Shown: piece after piece, positions 546 through 59,630 of the stretch
Position numbering within the stretch: the first letter of the stretch is position 1
Layout of the letters: each line of letters starts with the position of its first letter
Assembly: GCF_006345805.1 (NCBI RefSeq)
Contig: NC_042997.1
Location: 150,846,001-150,910,000 of the forward strand
Reading direction: 5' to 3'
Source: Octopus sinensis
Lineage: Eukaryota
Length of the DNA stretch: 64,000 nt
Translations under genes and position numbers: made by a program
Notes under the pieces: model-generated
Database searches by the model: none
Told to the model about the DNA's origin: nothing
What the model saw: the letters and a program-made list of their open reading frames with translations, nothing else

Positions 546-669
546 AAGAACTCCATCTTCATCATATTGCAGCTTGTTGTCAGAATCAATATTATAATTA
601 CTCTGATATTAAATAATATTTCACTATTAATGTCAATCATTATCTAGTATTTTGGTAGATGCATCGCTG

Positions 670-684
670 GTAGTAGTAGTAGTA

Positions 685-754
<70 letters not shown>

Positions 755-1090
755 TGTTGTTGTTGTTGTTGTTGTTGTTCAGTAGTAGTATTAGTAGTAC
801 TAGTTGTTTCAGTAGTAGTAGTTGTAGTAGTAGTAGCAGTAGTAGTAGTAGCAGTAGTGGTTCTGTTTCTGGTGTTGATTATCGTGATAGTGACAGTGGT
901 CGTCGTGGTAACAACAGTGGAACAGGGAGTTGTGATAGCGGATGAGATGGTTATACTGGTGATGGTTGTTGTGGTTGTGGTGGTGATGGTGTGAATGTAG
1001 TAATGGTTGTTGTAGAAGTATTTTAAAATAGCAGGATTAACGCAGAAAATAATGAAGTGGTTGATGAAGTACACGATGATGCTGACGAAT

Positions 1091-1129
<39 letters not shown>

Positions 1130-1961
1130 GAGGAGGAGGAGGAGTAGTAGTAGTAGTAGTAACAGTAGTAGTAGTAGCAGAAGAAGAAGAAGAAGAAGAA
1201 AAAGAGGCGGGGAAGAAATGGAGGAAGAGGAGGAAGAGAAGATGAGTCCGGAGCAGAAAATGAAGAAGAAGAAGGGGATGATGAAAGGGAGGAAGAGGGG
1301 GAAAAGAAGGGGAAGGGGAAGAAAAGAAAAAATGAAGAAGAAAAATAAGAAAAATAAGAAGGCGAAAAAGAAAAGGAGGAATAGAAGAGGAAAGAGAAAT
1401 AAGAAGGAAACGAAGAAGAAGAAGAGAAGAGAAAGAAGAAGAAGAAGGAGAAGTAGAATGAGCAGAAGAGGAAAAAGAGGATGAAGTAGCTGAAGAGGAG
1501 GCTGAGGATGGAGCATGAGCAAGTGGATAAGGGGAAGTGGATGTAGAGCGACAAGTGGGTTAGGAGAAGACGATGTTCAACAGCGAAATTTAAAAGATAG
1601 TGAAGGAAAAGAATAAGTAGCAGGAAGAAGACAAAAAGAATAATAAGAATAACAGAAAATGGAATAGGAAGGATGGGAGAGGTGAAAGCAGGAGAGGGTG
1701 TTTGGATATTTTTTCTGTTGGTTTTAGTAATATTTTTCAGTTCGTATTCCATGTATAATTTTTCTTTACGGAAGACAATATAGCTCATTTTAGCAATAAC
1801 AGCAGACATCAGCAACCATTACCATCCTCCTCCTTCTTCTCATCATGATCATCATCATCCTAATCGTCATCATCATTACCATCATTACCATCATTATCAT
1901 AAAGAAGAGTGGTATTATTAGTTGTAGTTGTTATAGCGAAATTACTACTACTACTACTACA

Positions 1962-3973: not shown

Positions 3974-4179
3974 AGGTATGTTTAAAGATAATCAAACCGA
4001 ATTTTTATCGTTTCGAGCCACTCCCCCAAAGACTGTTTTTGCCAAATTTGGTGAAAATCCGTTAATCTGTTTTCCACTAATTTTCCGAAATCGCAAACAA
4101 AAACGGTTGATTACAATGCACCGCTTTCGATTAAGCTCGCAGCACATTAATAATAATAGTAGTAGTAACAATAATACAC

Positions 4180-5090
4180 TTGAAATCAAAGAGCAACTCA
4201 AGGAATGTGTGACTTCCATTAACATCTGTGCTGTCACTGTAGTCCGCTATGGTACTTCCATCTCGAAATGGACACAAGCGGAGATTGACCAACTCGATGG
4301 CACTACCCGAAAGGTAATGACAACGCATGGTGCCCTCCACCCTAAAGCAAATGTACACAGACTCTAAATGAAGAGGGGTAAAGCCGGACGTTGGCTGATA
4401 AGCATGTGGGAGTGCATCAACAATGAAAGAAGAAATATGGCAGAATATTTGGTAAACAGCAAACAAGACATGTCACAGTATACTGCTAGTGCAGAAGGAG
4501 GCAACGAAAAAGGACTTGAGAGTTCTCATGAATCCCGACCAAGAACACCCAGCGAGAGAGAAGAAACCCTTCTGTGTATGGAACTATATGGTCAGTTTCA
4601 CCGTGAAACTAACAAATTAAAAGACCAGAAAGCATCAAGGAGATGGCTCAACAAAGGTGACCTAAAAAAAGAAGACTGAAAACCTAATCATCGTTGCCTA
4701 AGGAAAAGGGCATTGAATACCAACTCAGTGAAAAAGCGTAACTCACATTGTTTGTGCTTGTGAAAGTCTTGCACAGAAAGAGTACAAGCGTAGACACGAC
4801 AAGGTAGCCCAAAATGTTCACTTGCTACTATGCTGTATATATGGATATGAGGTTACGGTTGCTTAGTACCGACATACACCGGTAAAGGTAATGGACGAAA
4901 AGGTGAAAGGCAAAAAACCTCTGGGACTTTGATTTCAAGATAGACACGGTGTTAGAGCACTGAAGGCTGGATATAGTACCTTTTAGAAGGGAGAAACAAT
5001 TGTTTGATAGTAAAGATATAATCAGCTGTACCCCTGGAGGAACGAAAAGAACTCTGCGACTCAACACTATATTTGGAACTATGAAGGTAT
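4180..5090 (+). mobile_element. R4/Dong-like REL LINE remnant (RT C-terminus, Zn-knuckle, REL), frameshifted
   Basis: KWTQAEIDQLDGTTRKVMTTHGALHPKANVHRL; LYGQFHRE...WLNKGDLKKE; HIVCACESLAQKEYKRRHDKVAQ; NLWDFDFKID. Starts beside a TAA/TAG tract. Confidence 0.9.
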
Positions 5091-5091
5091 T

Positions 5092-5510
5092 TTAACGGTC
5101 TAACAAAATGCAGGCAAGTACTTTTCCTACTACAGACAAAAGGGAAATCCCACGAAATTTACCACAAAGATCTTTTGGACACAATTTATACAATGAGACT
5201 GAAATGGCATCAATCCAGTCTTGAAGCACTTTCTCAGTTCTCCAACAGTGACAAATTAATATTGTTAAGAGTTCAAGCATTTTGTCACCCACATATTTCA
5301 AGACTTCTGCAGAGATTTCATCAAACCCTGGAGACTTATTGTTGTTCAGCTTATTCACAGCTAAATAAATGTCATTTAGAATTGCTTCAAATGTCATCTC
5401 TTCTATAACTGGAAGGTGTTCGATTTTTTGTATCATTCTCATGTCAGCGGATGATGGTCTATTCGAAAGTGCAGAAAAATGCTTTACCCAACGCATATGA
5501 ATAGAAACGG
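5092..5510 (-). mobile_element. RTE-like LINE reverse transcriptase fragment
   Basis: RWVKHFSALSNRPS...NKSPGFDEISAEVLK...DWIDAISVSLYK...CGKFRGISLLSVVGKVLACILLDR. Confidence 0.9.
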
Positions 5511-8500
5511 TGTCAGTCAGAAGCAAACGTCCAATTGCTGTTCTCACTGCATATATATATATGTACGTACATACACACGGACAGACATGCATATGTATAA
5601 TGTTGAAGCCATCCACAATTCTGTTTTTGTTACACATATATATGTACCGTGAAATAGGTATGCAGTTATCTTTCAGTTTGATATAAAATTCTTTCCATAT
5701 ATAACTTAACATTAAACATTGTAGTAAACGTGAGTGTGCGTATGTGTGTGCGTGTGTGATGATGTATACTCAAATACGTGCATTTATATATGTATATAAT
5801 ACACACACACATATAGATACACGGATATATACATGCATATACATTCATACAAATAGATATTGTTATATGCTTGGAGTTGTTAGGAACATTTGTCTATATG
5901 CTGGAGTTTTTCCCCTCGACACTTGATCTTTTCCGTTTTAGACAGGCTTACGAAAGAGTAATACGTCTGACAGTGATATCTACCGTAAGGTTGTATATTT
6001 GTTATAGATGGATTTTCGTTTAGGCAGATTATCTGCGCACTACTCTAGGAAAATTTAATATTGTAAGGCTGGCGAATATCTTTAAATCTGCTTGGAACGA
6101 GCAAATAAATTGCTCAATATTACCACACTCGATGTCAGGAATTCTCGACAAAGTGGCTGCTATGTTTTCAGTATCAATAAACATTATTTAGCTTTTAGAC
6201 TCAACTTAAGGATTATAAAATATTCTATTTAAAATAATCGAGAATCAAGCTTCATTTTATAAGAATTGTCATTTTCCATGAAGACTTGCATTTTATCTGT
6301 CTTTGCTATAAACCTGAGATATGGTCACCAGAGTAATAAAGTATCACAAGTTTGAGATTGTGGAGGGAAAAGGATAGAATTACACGCAATTAAATGTTTG
6401 CTTTTGTATGTACCATTCTGCCATTGTTGAGGCCGGGTTTAAAAGCGCAATGCGATAATACAACTGATGGATTTCTTCTATTATCTACTGTAGGGAACAT
6501 CCGTGCCTTAGAATGGTCGTACTTTAAGCTTCAATATTTTATGTATATTAGATTGTTCTCGAAATGCAGGCAACGCTTCCTTGTTACTTCCGTTCGAGAG
6601 TTACAAATAGCGATAATTTTCAAAGACTTACATTTCGTTGTGTGATGTTAAGTCACTTTAGTTTCTTTTTGAGTTGAAGACACATACTAACGATCAATTC
6701 ACTACAGAATATTCTGGATGCCGAAAAGTCATCACATCTATTAGAATCATTAGTGAAATGTGGCATATTATGTTTATGATATTCATGCTCCAGAGCAAAT
6801 TTATAATTATACAATTATTACAAATACAATGTTTGGTGGAAAGCTTCAAATCTTTATCTGATGAAAGTCGTATCTCCTGTTAACCAAACGCGACTCGTCA
6901 GTTCAGAAGCTTGTTTCAAAATCTAAGAATCTATCCCGTATGACAAAGATGTTGCTAAGTGAAACAGAATCCCGTATATCAAGTGTTGTGATCTTGAAAA
7001 GTTAATGTTGATAAAACGCACCGTCTGAACTGAACCATTTTTTAAATTGTTCAATCTAAACATAAGTACAAAAGAAGTAAAATATTTGAGAATAATCCGT
7101 ATTTCTTATATATATTCTTCTTCAGACGTGACTATTTCCCTATCGTCAGCGTACAACAAATCGTGAAATAGTGAAATAGTGTCACGATTGTTGTTAATGT
7201 AATTCTGAAGGAATTGATATTGGACAGTGATATATATTTCACGGACTTGAAATACTTGAATAATTACGAATGCAAGGTACACAGAAAATAACACTCACAG
7301 AGTTTAACACCATAGTTGGCACCAGCTTCTAGATGACTCGATTCTGATATAAAAGTATTAGAATTCATGTAGGAGTCCTTCAAGATGTGCAGTTAGACAA
7401 ACCTATCAGTAAATTTCGGTGAGCTCACAGGTTTTCATCAATTCACCAATCCCAATTGTAAGTTCTGCATTGTTCGCTACACAGTCATCATGAAAGAACT
7501 TCGAACGACCAGCCAAGATAATACTCGTTATAAGATAGTATCAAATAATATGATAATAGAAATGTTGCTTGTACAAAAGAAAAAAATATATTCCCTAAGT
7601 TTCATGGGATGAAACAAAGGAAGACAAAATGATGTGTGAAGTCAACGCATGTTTCATGTTAGCTTTCATTCTAATTATGTTAACAGACAAGGGCAACCTG
7701 AAAACAACAGGATTTTGATTTTGATGTTGTGCATATCTTACCCGGATGTTCTCAATAGAATTATGTGTCCAGCAATTTGAATGGTCTGACTCTTTGCTTT
7801 GTCAACAGCATGAGCATTTTTATATTCATCCATTATTTTATACATCTTGATTTTACATTGCGTGGTTTCAAGCAGACTTCTTTCAGCAAAATAGATGAGA
7901 ATTTCTTAAAGAGGTTTTGACCATGTAACTGATTATATGTCACAAGTACAACTCACAAGCGTATGTCACATACAATGAACGTTGGTGACTGTATGCGTGC
8001 GTAAGTGTGTATTTTCGTGTGTTTCTCTGTGGATGTGAAAGTGCACACTCGTGAAAATATGTTTCTCTCAGTTTTAGTTAAAAGTAGGAAAAATATCAAC
8101 TGCGAATAACAGCATGTGTATAGCATATGGTATACTTAATGTACCATTTCTTTTCTACTTTTTTAAATGTTTGATATTATATTTATGCTTCTTTCACATA
8201 GCGCTTTGCATCGTCCAGGCCTATATTATCCCGAAATGCATTTTGTCTTCTCATTTTTGTGGTATATGTTTTCATTGTGGTATATGATTTGAGGGATATT
8301 TCTTGCTACTTTGAGCTCTGGAAATGTCTACCTATGAGAGATAATGATAGCTTACGTAATCCAGAGCAACCTTAATGAGATATGAAATTATATACTTTCC
8401 ATTGCTGCAGATAATTGTAGAGTATTTTAGAAATATTAATATGGTATCTACTAAAGTCATAGCCTGACTTAACTATCCGCTAAGACTAACAATCATTTCT

Positions 8501-21487: not shown

Positions 21488-21559
<72 letters not shown>

Positions 21560-21623
21560 TATATTATATATATATATATATATAAATGAAAGAATGGATT
21601 CGAACGAAGATGTTAACAAAATT

Positions 21624-21716
21624 CCTTTACTCTCGACATATGTTTCGAAGACAACATGGTTTCATTCCAAAGGAATAAAGGGTGCATTATGCAATCTTCT
21701 CATCAGGAAAGAAAGG
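21624..21716 (-). ncRNA. Type I hammerhead ribozyme, apparently intact
   Basis: CCTTTCTTTC-CTGATGA-GAAGA..TCTTC-GAAA-CATATG-TC|GAGAG(T)AAAGG: 10-bp bulged stem I, G10.1-C11.1, palindromic stem III ACATATGT, GUC triplet. Confidence 0.85.
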
Positions 21717-21760
21717 GAGAATTTCGAAATTTTTGTTTGTCTTGTTGTCGAGAGATGCTC

Positions 21761-21851
21761 CCTTTCTTTCCTGATGAGAAGATTGCATAATGCACCTTTT
21801 ATTCCTTTGGAATGAAACCATGTTGTCTTCGAAACATGTCCAGAGTAAAGG
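21761..21851 (+). ncRNA. Type I hammerhead ribozyme, right-arm copy with N1.1 mismatch
   Basis: CTTTC-CTGATGA(21771)-GAAG..CTTC-GAAAC-AT-GTC|CAGAG; the first stem I pair is C-C. Confidence 0.7.
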
Positions 21852-22090
21852 AATTTTGTTAACATCTTCGTTCGACTCCATTCTTTCATTTATTCAAATA
21901 CAACACACAAATTTCTGCACATGAACCCAGAGTTTCTACCCTTGGACAGGTCGCTTCAACCGTGTTTCTGACGTGAATTTGCTACCCTGGTTTCGGTTCA
22001 ACAAATTTTCCATGCTGACGATAAACATAGGATAATTCATTCACCTATTTAAATATATATACATACACACACACAAACACACACACACAC

Positions 22091-33754: not shown

Positions 33755-34401
33755 CAACAATTGAGGGTAAAATTAATTAATTAATCAATTTCACCAAGTA
33801 TTCAGTATGCAAAGGGACCATTTAAGGCGAATTCAAATTATTACATTATATAAAAGGGCTTAGTAAAATAAATTACTTTGCCGCATACTGAACTCATTAG
33901 AAATAGCAGCCAAAAAAACTTTTTTAAAACTATTTCTAATACTTAAAGAAAACCTCTCTCATATAGTGTTTGCTCAATTCAACTCACGAAAGTATGGGGG
34001 TAGAGACATTAAAAAATCAAATGCAAAGGTTATTTGAGAACGTACGTTTCAAGATTAGTCAAACTCGACATTTCTATCATCAGCTCAGAACTCCCTGGTT
34101 TGGATTTGAAAACACTGAAAGTGGGAGCATACCCTTTCGGCTTCTTATCGCTTCTGAAGGGAGTTCTGAGCTGATGATAGAAATGTCGAGTTTGACTAAT
34201 CTTGAAACGTACGTTCTCAAATAACCTTTGCATTTGATTTTTAATGTCTCTACCCCCATACTTTCGTGAGTTGAATTGAGCAAACACTATATGAGAGAGG
34301 TTTTCTTTAAGTATTAGAAATAGTTTTAAAAAAGTTTTTTTTGGCTGCTATTTCTAATGAGTTCAGTATGCGGCAAAGTAATTTATTTTACTAAGCCCTT
34401 T

Positions 34402-34982: not shown

Positions 34983-36177
34983 TATAATGTTAATAATATT
35001 ATGTCTATGTGCCTATATTGCTAGGTATTCACCTAGTCTAATCTTGGACATTTTTATGGTGGTTTATATCCTCACTGTATATATATATATTATAGGGTAG
35101 CGAATATTCGTTATATATATCCCTACCAGTGGTCTAACACGTATAAATAGTCAATAGACAACATATTCATATTTTAAAATAGTGTATATTTAAACACGAA
35201 AGAAAAATTACCCTTTGACAGGTAATTTTTACATGTTAGACATAGCAGCCAATACGGCCAAAACCACAATTTAACAGCAATTTTCGATGTAATTGAAAAA
35301 TAAAAACTTTTACCTTGTTATTTATTATCGGTTATACGATGGTTTCGAAATTTCTTTAGCAAACAATATTATTTGTCATCCTTTAATAGGTAATTTAGCA
35401 TAACAATATCATTGGTAGGCGAATTTCTCGTCAGTAACCGTGTGTGTGTGTGTGTGTGTGTTTGCATGCATCGATGCACACGCAGATACATAGATAAATA
35501 AATAAACAGACAGATACGTACTTGCATACATACGTACGTACGTACATACATACATAGCAAATTAAAATGACGAGGGAATAATAAAGTATATCACGAATTT
35601 ATTCAGCTTACAGCTATTATGTTATACGATGAAAATGCACTCATTGTTGAATGCTTGTGCATCCCCCGATTGCTACATCGTACCTTCAAAAAGGATATGT
35701 ACTTTTATTTATACACAAACGAAAATGTAGGAAAGTCTTTATTGGCCCTCATAATCACTATCTGATTCTCATTTTCATCTTTTTCCGCTGTGTTCTTTCT
35801 CCCTTCCTTTCACTGTCTTGGATTCAATCCCATTGAAACTTTTCCATTTACAAGACATATTGTACATGTTTCCTTTTTTTATTTATATTTTTGTAGAAAC
35901 TCTTTATATATGCTTTTGTAATAAGTTGATTGCATCTTATTACAGAAAATTTTTTATCTCAACGAGTGTTGTAACATAATTTCTTATTGCCTGGTGATTT
36001 TTTATTATATATTAATTCTCTTTACGCACACAGTGGATTAATATATAATCAAAATCACCTGATGCTTTGTTCTGATGCATATGTATACGGACATGTAACA
36101 TAAAGTAATTAGTATCGCTATACCAAAGGGAAATGATAATAATAACGATAGTAATAATAATAATATAATAATAATAA

Positions 36178-44850: not shown

Positions 44851-45376
44851 AACTAGCCATCAAAATTTCTACTTGTAAGACAGGTAGTGTATGTCTCAGA
44901 ATATTCTGCTCTGTTCTTATCTTTGAATGATATTTGGTTTTTATTTTCAGACCAGTCAATAAACATCTAGGAGTTTATTATTTAGCATCTTGTAATATAA
45001 TCGCATTTAATGCAGGGCTGCTTAGTTTTGCCTTACTTCACGCGTATTATAATAGAAATAGTATTTAAAGTCTTTACATGTGTGATTATGGAAAGATTTG
45101 TATCAGGTCTTGACAGATCATCAAGAACCTTCACTCCAAAGATATCAAGAATTAATTGTCAGAAAATAGCATAAGTAAAAAAAATCATTTATAGCACGCT
45201 TGCACATTTTTATATAATTGATTATAATAAATAGCATATCGTTTACTAAATCTTATTTTACAATCGTTTTCATTATTGATAAATATTTTGCCTAACCATT
45301 TATTTCCATATATACAGACATACATACATACACGCACACATGCACACACGAACACATACACGCAATCACACACAGA

Positions 45377-45428
<52 letters not shown>

Positions 45429-45716
45429 CATATACTATATATACCAGTAGCTGAAGAAAACAACGAAATTTGCAAACAAAGCATTGTGATAAATGTACAA
45501 ACATTTTATACCGTAACTCCGCTCCTATCTGTCCAACAAACATTCAGGAACATGGAGTTTAATGAAACTGTTATTTTCTCGCTCCCCATCTCTCTCCCTC
45601 TTTATACACACACACACACATATATATGTATGAGTACGTATGCATATGTATGTATTGTATGTATATGTATATATTACGTAAATGTATATATGCATGTATA
45701 TGTATGCATATGTATA

Positions 45717-45754
<38 letters not shown>

Positions 45755-45942
45755 CAGGCGTACATGTATATATATATATATATATTTGTTGAAATGGAAA
45801 GATGAATTTTCTTGTTACAGATTATTCAAAAGTTTAACCGATACCTGGGTAGCAAAAATCACAGCAGAAAAAAACACGGTTGGAGATAAGACCATTTGGT
45901 GTTGCAACCGTGCGTTGGTGCGGATAATTGAAGTTTAATATA

Positions 45943-46054
45943 ATTAGTGAATGGAAGAAATGGAGTTGAACGAAGATTGTACAGAATTCCTTTTATTAGA
46001 ATGTAATAAAAGGAATTCTGTACAATCTTCGTTCAACTCCATTTCTTCCATTCA

Positions 46055-46059
<5 letters not shown>
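45943..46059. repeat. Perfect 56-bp fold-back (spacer GAATG), same family as 21582-21893
   Basis: 45943-45998 is the exact reverse complement of 46004-46059; followed by (TA)n. Confidence 0.95.
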
Positions 46060-46097
<38 letters not shown>

Positions 46098-46373
46098 TAT
46101 ATATAATTAATCAATAAAAATGGTCTATGACTATTTAATTTTTTCCCACTAGGCCGCTGGTGGCAAAAAGAATTCTACAAAATTTTTTTTTTTTTTGCCA
46201 CCCTATATTGATTAATTATGAATTTTCTGGTTAATTCCGTAATGGAATCGACGGCTTATATTTATTTGCTGCCGATAAATTTGGCGCGAGTGCGACGATT
46301 TGAAAATTTTAGGTCAGATATTACCTTGGCAGGGTCGGAAATGCCTCGTGAAAATATCTGTTCCGACTTGGCT

Positions 46374-46480
46374 ATTTCTTGTTGAAGAATCTGAGGGCCT
46401 ATGGAAGATTGGTTTGATTTAATTTAATCAGGTTAGTTTACCATTAAACAGCAGATGAAACGGTGCATCGTACAAGAAAT
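46374..46480 (+). ncRNA. Array HHR copy 1 (C3>U, predicted inactive)
   Basis: ATTTCTTG-TTGAAGA-ATCTG..CAGAT-GAAAC-GGTGCATC-GTA|CAAGAAAT. Confidence 0.75.
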
Positions 46481-46872
46481 TACAGGGTAAATGTTTTTTA
46501 AATTTTCTCCTGTTTACGGAATTAATCTTTATTTGCGGTTGAAGCTTTGGCTGTTATTTCTAGCGGGTGAATGGCCTATTATGGCCGTTCCTTGATTGTT
46601 GATGTTGAACTTAAAAATGGTCTATGACTATTTAATTTTTTCCCACTAGGCCGCTGGTGGCAAAAAGAATTCTACAAAATTTTTTTTTTTTTTTTGCCAC
46701 CCTATATTGATTAATTATGAATTTTCTGGTTAATTCCGTAATGGAATCGACGGCTTATATTTATTTGCTGCCGATAAATTTGGCGCGAGTGCGACGATTT
46801 GAAAATTTTAGGTCAGATATTACCTTGGCAGGGTCGGAAATGCCTCGTGAAAATATCTGTTCCGACTTGGCT

Positions 46873-46978
46873 ATTTCTTGCTGAAGAATCTGAGGGCCTA
46901 TGGAAGATTGGCTTGATTTAATTTAATCAGGTTAGTTACCATTAAACAGCAGATGAAACGGTGCATCGTACAAGAAAT
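46873..46978 (+). ncRNA. Array HHR copy 2
   Basis: ATTTCTTG-CTGAAGA(46881)-ATCTG..CAGAT-GAAAC-GGTGCATC-GTA|CAAGAAAT; cut predicted after 46970. Confidence 0.88.
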
Positions 46979-47369
46979 TACAGGGTAAATGTTTTTTAAA
47001 TTTTCTCCTGTTTACGGAATTAATCTTTATTTGCGGTTGAAGCTTTGGCTGTTATTTCTAGTGGGTGAATGGCCTATTATGGCCGTTCTTGATTGTTGAT
47101 GTTGAACTTAAAAATGGTCTATGACTATTTAATTTTTTCCCACTAGGCCGCTGGTGGCAAAAAGAATTCTACAAAATTTTTTTTTTTTTTTTGCCACCCT
47201 ATATTGATTAATTATGAATTTTCTGGTTAATTCCCTAATGGAATCGACGGCTTATATTTATTTGCTGCCGATAAATTTGGCGCGAGTGCGACGATTTGAA
47301 AATTTTAGGTCAGATATTACCTTGGCAGGGTCGGAAATGCCTCGTGAAAATATCTGTTCCGACTTGGCT

Positions 47370-47476
47370 ATTTCTTGCTGAAGAATCTGAGGGCCTATGG
47401 AAGATTGGCTTGATTTAATTTAATCAGGTTAGTTTACCATTAAACAGCAGATGAAACGGTGCATCGTACAAGAAAT
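47370..47476 (+). ncRNA. Array HHR copy 3
   Basis: Same motif; core at 47378; cut predicted after 47468. Confidence 0.88.
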
Positions 47477-47870
47477 TACAGGGTAAATGTTTTTTAAATT
47501 TTCTCCTGTTTACGGAATTAATCTTTATTTGCGGTTGAAGCTTTGGCTGTTATTTCTAGTGGGTGAATGGCCTATTATGGCCGTTCCTTGATTGTTGATG
47601 TTGAACTTAAAAATGGTCTATGACTATTTAATTTTTTCCCACTAGGCCGCTGGTGGCAAAAAGAATTCTACAAAATTTTTTTTTTTTTTTTTTGCCACCC
47701 TATATTGATTAATTATGAATTTTCTGGTTAATTCCCTAATGGAATCGACGGCTTATATTTATTTGCTGCCGATAAATTTGGCGCGAGTGCGACGATTTGA
47801 AAATTTTAGGTCAGATATTACCTTGGCAGGGTCGGAAATGCCTCGTGAAAATATCTGTTCCGACTTGGCT

Positions 47871-47977
47871 ATTTCTTGCTGAAGAATCTGAGGGCCTATG
47901 GAAGATTGGCTTGATTTAATTTAATCAGGTTAGTTTACCATTAAACAGCAGATGAAACGGTGCATCGTACAAGAAAT
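47871..47977 (+). ncRNA. Array HHR copy 4
   Basis: Same motif; core at 47879; cut predicted after 47969. Confidence 0.88.
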
Positions 47978-48369
47978 TACAGGGTAAATGTTTTTTAAAT
48001 TTTCTCCTGTTTACGGAATTAATCTTTATTTGCGGTTGAAGCTTTGGCTGTTATTTCTAGTGGGTGAATGGCCTATTATGGCCGTTCCTTGATTGTTGAT
48101 GTTGAACTTAAAAATGGTCTATGACTATTTAATTTTTTCCCACTAGGCCGCTGGTGGCAAAAAGAATTCTACAAAATTTTTTTTTTTTTTTTGCCACCCT
48201 ATATTGATTAATTATGAATCTTCTGGTTAATTCCGTAATGGAATCGACGGCTTATATTTATTTGCTGCCGATAAATTTGGCGCGAGTGCGACGATTTGAA
48301 AATTTTAGGTCAGATATTACCTTGGCAGGGTCGGAAATGCCTCGTGAAAATATCTATTCCAACTTGGCT

Positions 48370-48476
48370 ATTTCTTGCTGAAGAATCTGAGGGCCTATGG
48401 AAGATTGGCTTGATTTAATTTAATCAGGTTAGTTTACCATTAAACAGCAGATGAAACGGTGCATCGTACAAGAAAT
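48370..48476 (+). ncRNA. Array HHR copy 5
   Basis: Same motif; core at 48378; cut predicted after 48468. Confidence 0.88.
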
Positions 48477-48656
48477 TACAGGGTAAATGTTTTTTAAATT
48501 TTCTCCTGTTTACGGAATTAATCTTTATTTGCGGTTGAAGCTTTGGCTGTTATTTCTAGTGGGTGAATGGCCTATTATGGCCGTTCCTTGATTGTTGATA
48601 TATATATATATATATATATGCATGTATATATATATATATTTATACATGTATGTACA

Positions 48657-48727
<71 letters not shown>

Positions 48728-48933
48728 CGTTATTATTAAAATTATAATGTACGCCATAATCGAAACTGCAGCTTTTCTGCGGGATAGGTCGTAACACACA
48801 CGTGGTTATAAAGATAGATAGGTATCACATTCGGCTGTATGATTTGGGGAGTGCCGTTGAATATTAGTTATTTGATGAAGCTTAATCACTTTCATATTTA
48901 ATCCTAACACTCGCAAATTTATAACTCGGAGTA

Positions 48934-48993
48934 TTACGTTGAGGAGAACAATAGGTAAATATAATATACTTTAAGTTCGAAACGCGTCTGTGA
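48934..48993 (+). ncRNA. Hammerhead with C3>U, different family
   Basis: TTACG-TTGAGGA-GAAC..GTTC-GAAAC-GC-GTC|TGTGA; palindromic ACGCGT. Confidence 0.65.
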
Positions 48994-49477
48994 TTAACCG
49001 AAGTCGTGAGAACTCATCGTTTATCTTTTAACCTACATAAAATATTGTGTTATTGTCTCGGAGACATTAGCGTCTATTTTTCTTTCAGTACGTGGCGACG
49101 TACTTAGCTAGCCGCTGATTATAATTATGCATAGAATTAAATTATAGAATATTATATATATATACGTTTCTATATATATTTGTGTATCATGACTCATGCC
49201 TTGGTTTCTTCGAAAAGTTGAAGTTATGTACTTTTATGTCTCTTTCTTCTTCTCTCTTTCCATCTCCTCATACTTTTACTCCTTTACACTGTGTTATCAT
49301 CTTATTGATATATACCATTCTCATTTTCCATATTTCTTCACCAATTTACTTTGATGACTGAACATCCCATACTCGAGGATATCCCAGAAACAGATGTAAG
49401 ATTTTGAATTTCTTCCTGTAATAATACTGTATATGAATTGAGATGTTTGCCTTGCTTTAAAAGTTGACATCCTGTTT

Positions 49478-49520
<43 letters not shown>

Positions 49521-58729: not shown

Positions 58730-59630
58730 TATTTATATGAACACAGAAAAATCCCTTTCAGAGTTTAGCTGCCTTCTTCTAGAAAATAGAATCAAAAATA
58801 ATTCCTCAGAACAAAGAGAGCAGAACCTATTATCAATTCTAAAAGCCGGGGCCGTCGATAAATTTCTCCATTCAATAAAGTACATTTTATTATTATCTTT
58901 ATGATTCCAGATGAAATTACTAAGACTAGTAGATGAAGCCCTATTTCTGTTCCTAAAGGAATAGTAATGATTCGAAACACTTTTCTTAAAATAATTAGCA
59001 GAAGAACTAATGTAAAAGTAATCATTACCTTCAGAAATAACTTTAGTTTGATAGACGATATTACTAAATAAACAATTTTCTTTGTTTCTACAATCACAAA
59101 GGCCATTCTCACCTCTATTTGCACCTTCATTAATTGAATTATCATTAATTAAAAATGCTATTACCTCCAATATTATTGAAACTTATATCAGAAATAGAAT
59201 TCAAAATATCCCTGCCAACCTAGGAAAATCATTAACATTGGTACTCATGGTCCAGTCTCGCTAGTATTAACAAGTTATCTTGAGGATAAACCTAGATAAT
59301 TTATTTTCATTAATAGAAGAAATAATCTGAGATAAATTCCAAAAAGCAACCTTAACTGATCTAGGATTCAAAATCTCGTAATATCTATTTTTTATTGAAG
59401 TGTTTTAAAAACAATTTATACACTGGTCCAAATAAGTTACCTTTTAATTGACTAGCATTGGATATAACAAATCAAATAATGTTTCTCTTGTCCAAAACAT
59501 ATTTAGAATAGCATAAATTATTCACCTTATAGAGAAACTTAGAACTTTTATTTCATGTTGAATTTTTCGTTTGCGTTATTTGAATTAATTAGACTCCGAA
59601 ACAATTTGTAGAATGTATATTGGTTCAGTA
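58730..59630 (-). mobile_element. Decayed Penelope-like element (thumb and GIY-YIG)
   Basis: KRNII*F...KHF; ILNPRSVKVAF; CDCRNKENCLFSNIVYQTKV...FYISSSANYFKKSVSNHYYSF...LSNFIW...IEW...CSLCSEELFLIL...LNSERD. Confidence 0.88.

What the first reader, a model, noticed from the sequence alone, without database searches (positions are those of the whole stretch)
46116..48599. Five-copy ~499-bp tandem array with one type I hammerhead ribozyme per unit: candidate cephalopod retrozyme / self-processing circular RNA
Seen: five head-to-tail units (periods 497-501), no ORF, (TA)n on both sides. Each unit has ATTTCTTG-CTGAAGA-ATCTG[~58-nt multi-hairpin insert]CAGAT-GAAAC-GGTGCATC-GTA|CAAGAAAT: 8-bp stem I, 5-bp stem II closed by A-U instead of the usual G-C, near-palindromic stem III (ACGGTGCATCGT), GUA triplet. 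Predicted cuts after 46472 (dead copy), 46970, 47468, 47969, 48468 would release 498-501-nt monomers. Established: tandem type I HHR repeats in metazoan genomes (non-LTR retrozymes, PLE pLTR repeats) self-cleave to monomers that can circularise, and palindromic stem III favours dimeric folding in tandem transcripts. Inference: a non-autonomous ribozyme retroelement mobilised in trans by PLE RT/GIY-YIG, possibly by rolling reverse transcription of a circle. The unit looks larger than the few-hundred-nt monomers I recall, and I know of no description of this family in octopus.
Basis: partly seen in the sequence, partly recalled or inferred. Interest (0 to 1): 0.95.

Follow-up and report, generated by a model that had tools for sequence, protein, structure and literature searches.

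The report
Tandem hammerhead-ribozyme retrozyme array
Five head-to-tail copies of a 499-bp non-coding unit, each carrying a self-cleaving hammerhead ribozyme motif, sit inside a (TA)n microsatellite; by sequence this is a new family of an already described kind of animal mobile element (a non-LTR "retrozyme"), not a new kind of system.

Summary
Window 46115-48599 is a 5.0-copy, 499-bp tandem array at 99% identity. Four units carry a complete type I hammerhead (HHR) motif; unit 1 has a C3-to-U change in the core. A descriptor scan expects 0.015 such motifs per shuffled window. Rfam does not reach its threshold: Hammerhead_1 scores 15.9 bits against a cut-off of 34, and only when 131 nt are searched alone.

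A transcript spanning two adjacent units folds, unconstrained, into a double hammerhead with a 12-bp inter-unit helix III (pair probabilities 0.92-1.0). The monomeric helix III is unstable (-0.2 kcal/mol). The ribozyme is therefore predicted to work only in multimeric transcripts.

Every testable published criterion for metazoan non-LTR retrozymes is met. Cleavage, circular RNA, genomic copy number, host taxon and the mobilising enzyme could not be tested.

Published retrozyme units span 51-972 bp, a roughly 500-bp hammerhead satellite has been known since 2000, and retrozymes are already described in molluscs.

Two additions: a 14-nt inverted unit fragment sits at the 5' junction, and at least two other hammerhead-bearing elements lie in the window, one a Penelope-like foldback. 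Verdict: new member of a known kind, modest interest.

The parts
46115..48599 (+). Tandem array of 5 units minus 8 nt. In the cleavage frame it is a 362-nt partial unit, four full monomers and a 131-nt partial unit. Period 497-501, 36% G+C.
46374..46480 (+). Hammerhead domain of unit 1. The core carries C3-to-U (TTGAAGA at 46382). The cleavage site GUA|C falls after 46472.
46873..46978 (+). Hammerhead domain of unit 2, complete. Helix I is 8 bp. The core is CUGAAGA. Helix II starts with A10.1-U11.1 and continues as a long imperfect hairpin. Then come GAAA and helix III ACGGUGCAUCGU. The cut falls after 46970.
47370..47476 (+). Hammerhead domain of unit 3, complete; cut after 47468. This copy gave the sub-threshold Rfam Hammerhead_1 alignment.
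47871..47977 (+). Hammerhead domain of unit 4, complete; cut after 47969.
48370..48476 (+). Hammerhead domain of unit 5, complete; cut after 48468.
47469..47969 (+). Example of a predicted released monomer (501 nt). The others are 46473-46970, 46971-47468 and 47970-48468. As a circle it folds to -137 kcal/mol with 60% of bases paired (z -4.5). The minus strand reaches only -96 kcal/mol.
46958..46969 (+). Helix III segment ACGGUGCAUCGU of unit 2. It pairs over 12 bp with 47456-47467 of unit 3 in the predicted double hammerhead.
47153..47198 (+). Hairpin GGTGGC-A/T-rich-T(14-18)-GCCACC, present in every unit (unit 3 copy given). The T-run length accounts for the variation in period.
46103..46116 (-). 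A 14-nt exact inverted copy of unit positions 235-248 (TATTGATTAATTAT). It sits between the upstream (AT)n and the first unit.
   Evidence: Only 1 of 61,456 other window positions has a 14-mer match to the unit.
46058..46105 (.). Upstream (AT)24 flank of the insertion.
48598..48727 (.). Downstream (AT)~65 flank of the insertion.
45950..46052 (.). Perfect palindrome with 49-55-nt arms abutting the upstream (AT)n. The arms are 82-84% identical to the outer tails of the hammerhead-bearing foldback at 21585-21890. This is context, not part of the array.

Best explanation
This is a young, non-coding, non-autonomous retroelement of the metazoan non-LTR retrozyme class, inserted in a (TA)n microsatellite.

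Proposed cycle:
1. The plus strand is transcribed through the array.
2. Adjacent units pair through the self-complementary 12-nt helix III segment and form double hammerheads. In these, the catalytic core of one unit cuts after the GUA of its neighbour.
3. [quoted passage not shown]
4. A host tRNA-type RNA ligase closes them into highly base-paired circles. The isolated hammerhead is held inactive in a circle because its own helix III is too weak.
5. A reverse transcriptase supplied in trans copies the circle or an uncleaved multimer at a nick in (TA)n, producing a tandem cDNA array. The most likely source is a Penelope-like element with a GIY-YIG endonuclease.

Shown here: the array, the complete motif in 4 of 5 units, its improbability by chance, the double-hammerhead fold, the stable strand-asymmetric fold of the monomer, the (TA)n flanks, and the inverted junction fragment.

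Inferred, not shown: transcription, cleavage, ligation, and the identity of the reverse transcriptase.

The confidence of 0.75 is for the class assignment (a hammerhead-bearing retrozyme-type element). Present-day activity is less certain, roughly even odds.
For: - Array and unit identity.
- Complete type I core (C3-A9, G12-A14, A15.1-U16.1, H17=A) with helices of 8/5/4 bp in four consecutive units, against 0.015 expected per shuffled window.
- The canonical hammerhead fold lies only 0.5 kcal/mol above the minimum free energy. Helix III as a hairpin gives -0.2 kcal/mol, but -17.5 as a duplex with itself. Two domains together give -79.3 against 2 x -31.5.
- The unconstrained minimum-free-energy fold of 46873-47476 is a double hammerhead, with pair probabilities of 0.92-1.0 for all 12 helix III pairs.
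- Rfam Hammerhead_1 aligns over the full model in the same register.
- The monomer circle folds to -137 kcal/mol (z -4.5, 60% paired), and the plus strand is 41 kcal/mol more stable than the minus strand.
- There is no ribozyme motif on the minus strand, which fits a DNA-encoded element of one polarity.
- There is no ORF over 55 aa and no homologue.
- G+C is 36%.
- The published criteria are met (PMC7229834 sections read; preprint 10.64898/2026.07.22.740005).
- The array ends are internal to the monomer (positions 140 and 131), so the template spanned uncut or re-ligated GUA|C junctions.
- (TA)n covers only 3.9-6.5% of the window.
- A 14-nt inverted unit fragment sits at the 5' junction.
- Two further independent hammerhead motif loci lie in the window, one a PLE-style inverted foldback.
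- Microsatellite and (TA)n targeting, and inverted 5'-truncated copies, are published PLE traits (PMC8557442).
Against: - No Rfam family reaches its gathering score. The best Hammerhead_1 score is 15.9 bits against a cut-off of 34.
- The 10.1-11.1 pair is A-U, whereas G-C is the most conserved pair after 15.1-16.1 (PMC3088659, PMC4209133). This may lower activity.
- No loop-loop or pseudoknot tertiary contact could be identified.
- There is only one locus in 64 kb, and no relative in any searchable collection. No covariation test was therefore possible.
- Five copies at 99% identity carry almost no comparative information.
- The window holds no RT or GIY-YIG ORF.
- No expression data are available.
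- One variant is shared by adjacent units 3 and 4, and the edge units are the most diverged. Both are as expected from DNA-level unequal exchange, so part of the array could have grown without RNA.
- The U14-18 run in every unit would terminate Pol III transcription of the plus strand.
Confidence: 0.75

Rival explanations
1. A locally amplified minisatellite. One hammerhead-bearing fragment landed here once, for example the terminal repeat of a Penelope-like element. It then expanded to five copies by unequal crossing-over or replication slippage. The ribozyme would be a passenger relic, with no circular-RNA or retrotransposition cycle for this family.
For: - The preprint 10.64898/2026.07.22.740005 proposes exactly this route of local amplification from PLE termini.
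- The edge units (1 and 5) carry the most private changes, and units 3 and 4 share a variant. This is the pattern expected from DNA-level homogenisation.
- The unit occurs at a single locus in the window.
Against: - Four of five cores are intact, and the 12-nt helix III palindrome is invariant.
- The strongly structured, strand-asymmetric fold of the whole 500-nt unit suggests selection on the RNA.
- The inverted 14-nt junction fragment and the (TA)n flanks point to a reverse-transcription event.
- The two models are not exclusive.
Confidence: 0.15
2. Part of an autonomous Penelope-like element. The units would be its pseudo-LTRs, not a separate non-autonomous family.
For: PLE pseudo-LTRs carry type I hammerheads with a palindromic helix III, and PLEs insert as tandem or inverted partial copies in microsatellites (PMC4209133; PMC8557442).
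Against: - There are five consecutive units with no RT or endonuclease ORF between or beside them.
- The unit has no similarity to the other hammerhead-bearing elements in the window.
- PLE hammerheads have a highly conserved G10.1-C11.1 pair and a 1-2-bp helix III, unlike this motif.
Confidence: 0.05
3. A chance hammerhead-like motif inside an ordinary tandem repeat, or an assembly artefact.
For: Rfam finds nothing above threshold.
Against: - Shuffles expect 0.015 motifs per window even at much laxer helix lengths.
- The full-model Rfam alignment falls in the predicted register.
- The double-hammerhead fold emerges without constraints.
- The units differ at about 9 positions and in T-run length, which a collapsed or duplicated assembly would not produce.
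Confidence: 0.02
4. A DNA copy of an exogenous viroid-like or satellite circular RNA replicon, captured by a cellular reverse transcriptase.
For: It is a structured unit of about 500 nt with a hammerhead, arranged as a multimer like a rolling-circle intermediate.
Against: - Only one polarity carries a ribozyme. No hammerhead, hairpin, twister, HDV-like or other ribozyme family is found on the minus strand.
- The 36% G+C and A/T-rich make-up match the host window.
- No match was found in the viral or metagenome collections.
Confidence: 0.02

Closest known systems
Metazoan non-LTR retrozymes (Cervera & de la Pena 2020, NAR, PMC7229834; Li, Clavereau & Pollet 2026 preprint 10.64898/2026.07.22.740005)
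   Same: - Short non-coding tandem repeats with one type I hammerhead per unit.
- Low G+C, and no LTR, PBS or PPT.
- A highly self-paired predicted monomer.
- At least two consecutive complete ribozymes.
- Five units, as in most families (75% have 7 or fewer).
- Already reported in a mollusc (mussel, 350-390 bp).
   Different: - The unit is 499 bp. That is above the 170-400 nt stressed in 2020 but inside the 51-972 bp range of 2026.
- The 10.1-11.1 pair is A-U instead of G-C.
- Helix II is extended by a 58-nt imperfect hairpin.
- Helix I is 8 bp.
- The sequence is unrelated to anything retrievable here.
Newt satellite 2 / axolotl retrozyme hammerheads and the double-hammerhead model (Forster et al. 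1988, as cited in PMC4209133 and PMC7229834)
   Same: Monomeric helix III is too weak to hold. A palindromic helix III/loop 3 lets two tandem copies form one extended helix III, so cleavage is expected in multimers only.
   Different: - Here the dimer helix III is 12 bp with two G-U pairs.
- The amphibian units are about 330 nt and occur in up to about 10^5 copies.
- Copy number here is unknown.
pDo500 satellite of Dolichopoda cave crickets (PMC2837043)
   Same: Tandem units of about 500 bp carrying a hammerhead. Natural compensatory changes at the 10.1-11.1 pair are reported there.
   Different: pDo500 is an insect satellite making up about 5% of the genome. Here there is a five-copy array in a microsatellite.
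Minimal hammerheads in pseudo-LTRs of Penelope-like elements (Cervera & de la Pena 2014, PMC4209133; Craig et al. 2021, PMC8557442)
   Same: - Type I topology, palindromic helix III and presumed dimer mode.
- Tandem and inverted insertion structures.
- Insertion bias for microsatellites, with (TA)n reported for the Naiad clade (Neptune's zinc-finger linker is only hypothesised to confer such a bias).
   Different: - No RT or endonuclease ORF.
- Helix III is longer than the PLE 1-2 bp.
- There is no nucleotide between A9 and 10.1.
- The 10.1-11.1 pair is A-U.
- Naiads, the clade with the (TA)n bias reported in Octopus, lack hammerheads.
Plant LTR retrozymes (PMC4918200)
   Same: A non-autonomous element that makes circular RNA through hammerheads.
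   Different: The plant elements have type III hammerheads in two LTRs, with a PBS, a PPT and 4-bp target-site duplications. None of these is present here.

Membership tests
Metazoan non-LTR retrozyme | Head-to-tail tandem repeat of a short unit (150-450 bp in PMC7229834; 51-972 bp in the 2026 preprint) | tested here: met
   Period 499, 5.0 copies, 99% identity
Metazoan non-LTR retrozyme | A type I hammerhead with a complete catalytic core in each unit | tested here: met
   Met by descriptor in 4 of 5 units. Rfam RF00163 gives only 15.9 bits against a cut-off of 34, so it is met by motif descriptor and not by the curated covariance-model threshold.
Metazoan non-LTR retrozyme | [quoted passage not shown] | tested here: met
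   Four consecutive complete motifs; canonical fold at -31.0 kcal/mol
Metazoan non-LTR retrozyme | No LTR, PBS, PPT or protein-coding capacity; G+C below 50% | tested here: met
   ORFs are 55 aa or shorter and have no homologues. G+C is 36%.
Metazoan non-LTR retrozyme | Target-site duplication longer than 4 bp, when present | tested here: inconclusive
   Both flanks are (AT)n, so no duplication can be read. Craig et al. note the same problem for PLE insertions.
Metazoan non-LTR retrozyme | Predicted stable, highly self-paired monomer or circle | tested here: met
   -137 kcal/mol, 60% paired, z -4.5
Metazoan non-LTR retrozyme | Self-cleavage of transcripts and accumulation of linear and circular monomer RNA | not testable with these tools
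   Needs in vitro transcription and northern blots or RNA-seq from the source animal
Metazoan non-LTR retrozyme | Multiple dispersed genomic copies (a mobile family) | not testable with these tools
   One locus in the window. No eukaryotic genome collection was available, and the protein, metagenome and viral look-ups found nothing.
Penelope-like element (autonomous) | An ORF encoding a telomerase-like RT, with or without a GIY-YIG endonuclease, flanked by pseudo-LTRs | tested here: not met
   No such ORF lies in or beside the array. No Pfam RT or GIY-YIG hit was found in any window ORF of 120 aa or more.
Plant-type LTR retrozyme | Type III hammerheads in two LTRs, with PBS and PPT | tested here: not met
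   Helix I is the open helix (type I), and there are five equal units with no LTR architecture
Viroid-like or satellite circular RNA replicon (Avsunviroidae type) | Ribozymes in both polarities; an RNA-only replicon | tested here: not met
   No ribozyme motif on the minus strand, and the element is encoded in chromosomal DNA
Canonical hammerhead (Rfam Hammerhead_1 consensus) | G10.1-C11.1 closing pair of helix II and a short loop 2 | tested here: not met
   A10.1-U11.1 and a 58-nt helix II extension. Natural active variants at this pair exist (PMC3088659, PMC2837043).

The most novel reading that the evidence does not exclude
This family would be an obligate double-hammerhead retrozyme with an unusual core periphery: an A10.1-U11.1 pair and a helix II of about 30 bp. 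It would be mobilised by a (TA)n-targeting Penelope-like endonuclease/RT through twin-primed, rolling reverse transcription of a circle.

On that reading three features would be junction-level footprints of the mechanism: the 14-nt inverted unit fragment at the 5' junction, the near-integer lap count (5 units minus 8 nt), and the neighbouring palindrome whose arms start at the position equivalent to a hammerhead cut site. The mechanism has so far only been hypothesised for animal retrozymes.
Probability: 0.15. Interest if true: 0.6.

Novelty: new member of a known kind. Interest (0 to 1): 0.35.

Why it matters
In the searchable literature, no paper that mentions both hammerhead ribozymes and cephalopods describes one.

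The locus also has clean junctions, which could inform how animal retrozymes integrate:
- an insertion inside a (TA)n tract;
- an inverted micro-fragment at the 5' end;
- array ends internal to the monomer.

The hammerhead variant is a convenient test case for how far the periphery of the ribozyme can drift while dimer-mode cleavage is kept. It combines an A-U pair at 10.1-11.1, a long helix II and a 12-bp dimer helix III. None of this changes the current picture of these elements.

Tried and rejected
- Rfam at gathering score on the whole window gave nothing. At E<=10 on 45900-48800 it gave only microRNA-like hits to the flanking palindrome and to (TA)n, which are artefacts of perfect hairpins.
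- ARAGORN on 45000-49500 found no tRNA-like part, so there is no SINE-type Pol III origin.
- The 55-aa ORF of the unit is not on record as a gene and has no homologue.
- The exact 26-nt core string was absent from metagenome contigs.
- A gapped core pattern gave 28 metagenome hits. All lacked helix I and helix III and are chance matches in unrelated contigs.
- A 24-nt helix III/I string was absent from viral contigs.
- Identifying the organism failed. The LINE-like RT ORF at 5092-5712(-) matched only two anonymous ENA metagenome fragments.
- ORF 58733-59170(-) looked GIY-YIG-like to me by eye, but it had no protein homologue and no Pfam support, so I dropped the idea.
- Pfam on all 16 ORFs of 120 aa or more found no RT or endonuclease.
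- blastn of the unit against the window found no second locus and no similarity to the other hammerhead elements.
- Covariation analysis was not attempted, because five copies at 99% identity carry no signal.
Full report
**1. The observation**

Tandem Repeats Finder reports one array at 46115-48599, with period 499, 5.0 copies, 99% matches and no indels of note. Aligning the five units gives 99% mean column identity. The differences are:
- a T-run of 14, 16, 16, 18 and 16;
- three private transitions in unit 1;
- two 1-nt deletions in unit 2;
- one G/C difference shared by units 3 and 4;
- three private transitions in unit 5.

(AT)24 lies directly upstream (46058-46105) and (AT)~65 directly downstream (48598-48727). 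The longest ORF in the array is 55 aa. It has no homologue in the 5.8-billion-protein collection and is not on record as a called gene. The unit occurs nowhere else in the window.

**2. The ribozyme motif**

I wrote a type I hammerhead descriptor with these elements, in order: helix I, CUGANGA, helix II, GAAA, helix III closed by A15.1-U16.1, H17, and the return strand of helix I.

With minimum helix lengths of 5/4/3 bp it finds exactly four sites in the window on either strand. The cores are at 46881, 47378, 47879 and 48378, each with helices of 8/5/4 bp. In 200 shuffles the mean is 0.015 per window. Unit 1 has TTGAAGA (C3-to-U) at 46382. The cuts after GUA would fall after 46472, 46970, 47468, 47969 and 48468.

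Only when 131 nt are searched alone does Hammerhead_1 (RF00163) appear as the top hit. It scores 15.9 bits against a cut-off of 34, with E 0.22, over the full model 1-45. The alignment is in the same register as the descriptor and shows a 58-nt insertion in loop 2.

So the curated model agrees on the architecture but does not certify the motif. The shortfall comes from the insertion and from a helix II that does not match the consensus.

**3. Anatomy**

The 58-nt insert is not several hairpins. It is one long imperfect hairpin that continues helix II. Helix II opens with A10.1-U11.1.

Published surveys call G10.1-C11.1 the most conserved pair after A15.1-U16.1. They also report natural, active ribozymes with a U-U mismatch there (PMC3088659) and compensatory changes at this pair in the cave-cricket satellite (PMC2837043). 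I therefore treat the A-U pair as a deviation that may slow the ribozyme, not as evidence that the motif is false.

The canonical monomer fold (-31.0 kcal/mol) lies 0.5 kcal/mol above the minimum free energy of -31.5.

**4. Dimer mode**

The helix III segment ACGGUGCAUCGU folds on its own with only -0.2 kcal/mol. It pairs with a second copy over 12 bp at -17.5 kcal/mol. Two hammerhead domains together reach -79.3 kcal/mol against 2 x -31.5.

More tellingly, I folded the 604-nt transcript 46873-47476, which spans the ribozymes of units 2 and 3 with their natural 390-nt spacer. Its unconstrained minimum-free-energy structure is the textbook double hammerhead:
- 46958-46969 pairs with 47456-47467, with pair probabilities of 0.92-1.0;
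- both helices II form;
- the helix I strands are exchanged between units.

In that topology the core of one unit cuts the site of its neighbour.

This behaviour matches what is published for newt and axolotl retrozymes and for PLE hammerheads (PMC4209133; PMC7229834).

**5. The monomer as an RNA**

Closed into a circle, the 498-501-nt monomers fold to -137 to -140 kcal/mol with 60-62% of bases paired. Against dinucleotide shuffles the z-score is -4.5.

The complementary strand reaches only -96 kcal/mol (z -3.25 against -4.19 with the same kind of shuffle). The strand carrying the ribozyme is therefore also the better-folding one. No ribozyme motif of any Rfam family or of my descriptor lies on the minus strand.

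**6. Junctions**

In the cleavage frame the array is a 362-nt partial unit, four full monomers and a 131-nt partial unit. That makes five units minus 8 nt (GTTGAACT). Its ends are internal to the monomer, so the template must have run through intact GUA|C junctions. It was either an uncleaved multimer or a re-ligated circle.

Between the upstream (AT)n and the first unit lies ATAATTAATCAATA (46103-46116). This is an exact inverted copy of unit positions 235-248. Only 1 of 61,456 other positions in the window has any 14-mer match to the unit, and that one is a homopolymer.

I read this as a trace of a second priming event on the same template. It would be comparable to the inverted 5'-truncated copies described at PLE insertions (PMC8557442). 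That reading is an inference.

(TA)n covers 3.9-6.5% of the window. Landing inside such a tract is therefore mildly unlikely by chance. It fits the microsatellite and (TA)n bias reported for PLEs.

**7. Context**

A relaxed descriptor (helices of at least 4/4/2 bp) gives six hits, representing three independent loci, against 0.015 in shuffles. The two extra loci are both on the minus strand:
- One lies directly after a (CA)n tract (core at 35434; CGGTTA-CTGACGA-GAAATT...AAATTTC-GAAAC-CATC-GTA|TAACCG).
- The other lies in the right arm of a 300-bp foldback at 21585-21890 that abuts (AT)n (CTGATGA-GAAGAT...GTCTTC-GAAAC-ATAT-GTC|GAGAG). The two arms of the foldback are 95% identical.

The perfect palindrome at 45950-46052, which abuts the upstream (AT)n of the array, is 82-84% identical to the outer tails of that foldback. 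Its arms begin within about three nucleotides of the position equivalent to the foldback's hammerhead cut site.

A third, perfectly symmetrical foldback at 33912-34341 carries a hammerhead-like motif in each arm, judged by eye.

Hammerhead-bearing elements with PLE-style inverted insertions are therefore recurrent in this stretch. However, no RT or GIY-YIG ORF is present in the window.

**8. Comparison with what is known**

All sequence-level features used to define metazoan non-LTR retrozymes are met:
- type I hammerhead in short tandem repeats;
- multiple copies;
- no LTR, PBS or PPT;
- G+C below 50%;
- a self-paired monomer;
- at least two consecutive complete ribozymes.

Target-site duplications cannot be read in (TA)n. 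Cleavage, circular RNA and genomic dispersal cannot be tested here.

The unit size is not exceptional:
- family consensus lengths run from 51 to 972 bp;
- circles from 150 to over 1000 nt are mentioned;
- the pDo500 hammerhead satellite is about 500 bp.

Retrozymes are already described in a mollusc (mussel). None of the papers holding both 'hammerhead ribozyme' and 'cephalopod' describes a cephalopod retrozyme. I could not confirm that the window is from a cephalopod.

**9. Verdict**

The interpretation as a retrozyme-class element is the best-supported reading, with confidence 0.75 for the class assignment and lower confidence for present-day activity. The claims of unusual size and high novelty are not supported.

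This is a new family of a known kind. Its points of modest interest are the obligate-dimer fold, the A10.1-U11.1 pair with a long helix II, and unusually readable insertion junctions.

Noticed in passing
window 45950-46052: Perfect palindrome with 49-55-nt arms abutting the (AT)n just upstream of the array. Rfam scores it as various microRNA precursors below threshold, which is an artefact of the hairpin. The arms are 82-84% identical to the outer tails of the foldback at 21585-21890. They start within about 3 nt of the position equivalent to that element's hammerhead cut site. This could mean that a 3' self-cleavage product was reverse-transcribed from both sides of a (TA)n nick.
   Followed up: partly
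window 21585-21890: A 300-bp foldback (arms 95% identical, tails pointing outward) beside (AT)n at 21528-21584. Each arm carries a minimal type I hammerhead motif. It is complete on the minus strand (core at 21706; G10.1-C11.1, palindromic ACAUAUGU, GUC site). The plus-strand arm has a 2-nt deletion in loop 3. It looks like a pair of inverted, 5'-truncated Penelope-like copies. Rfam gives no hammerhead hit.
   Followed up: partly
window 35336-35441 (minus strand): A third independent hammerhead motif directly after a (CA)n tract: CGGTTA-CTGACGA-GAAATT...AAATTTC-GAAAC-CATC-GTA|TAACCG. Helices are 6/6/2 bp, with an insert of about 70 nt in helix II. There is no Rfam hit. The extent of the element was not determined.
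   Followed up: partly
window 33912-34341: Foldback with 100% complementary arms of about 185 nt and a 61-nt centre. By eye each arm carries a hammerhead-like motif (CTGATGA ... GAAAC-GTAC-GTT|CTCA), with helix II opening in a U-U mismatch or bulge. It did not pass my descriptor.
   Followed up: no
window 5092-5712 (-) and 3978-4367 (+): ORFs that resemble fragments of a non-LTR (LINE-type) reverse transcriptase. The first matches two anonymous metagenome RT fragments carrying Pfam RVT_1 (66% and 41% identity). No intact element is present.
   Followed up: partly
whole window: Very dense microsatellites. There are 105 perfect (TA)>=6 tracts covering 3.9% of the window, plus many (CA)n and compound repeats. 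G+C is 26-38%. Apart from the LINE-type RT fragment listed above, no ORF of 120 aa or more shows a credible protein-family match, and no Rfam family reaches its gathering score. This looks like intergenic or intronic metazoan DNA.
   Followed up: partly
window 58733-59170 (-): A 145-aa ORF with cysteine pairs and a Y-I-S ... FKK..H..SF stretch that reminded me of a GIY-YIG nuclease. Neither the protein search nor Pfam (best hit zf-RVT, E 0.48) supports that.
   Followed up: yes
window 640-1815 (-): The longest ORF in the window (391 aa) is made of low-complexity runs (F/S/Y/T/L/Q homopolymers). It is a by-product of simple repeats and not a gene.
   Followed up: no
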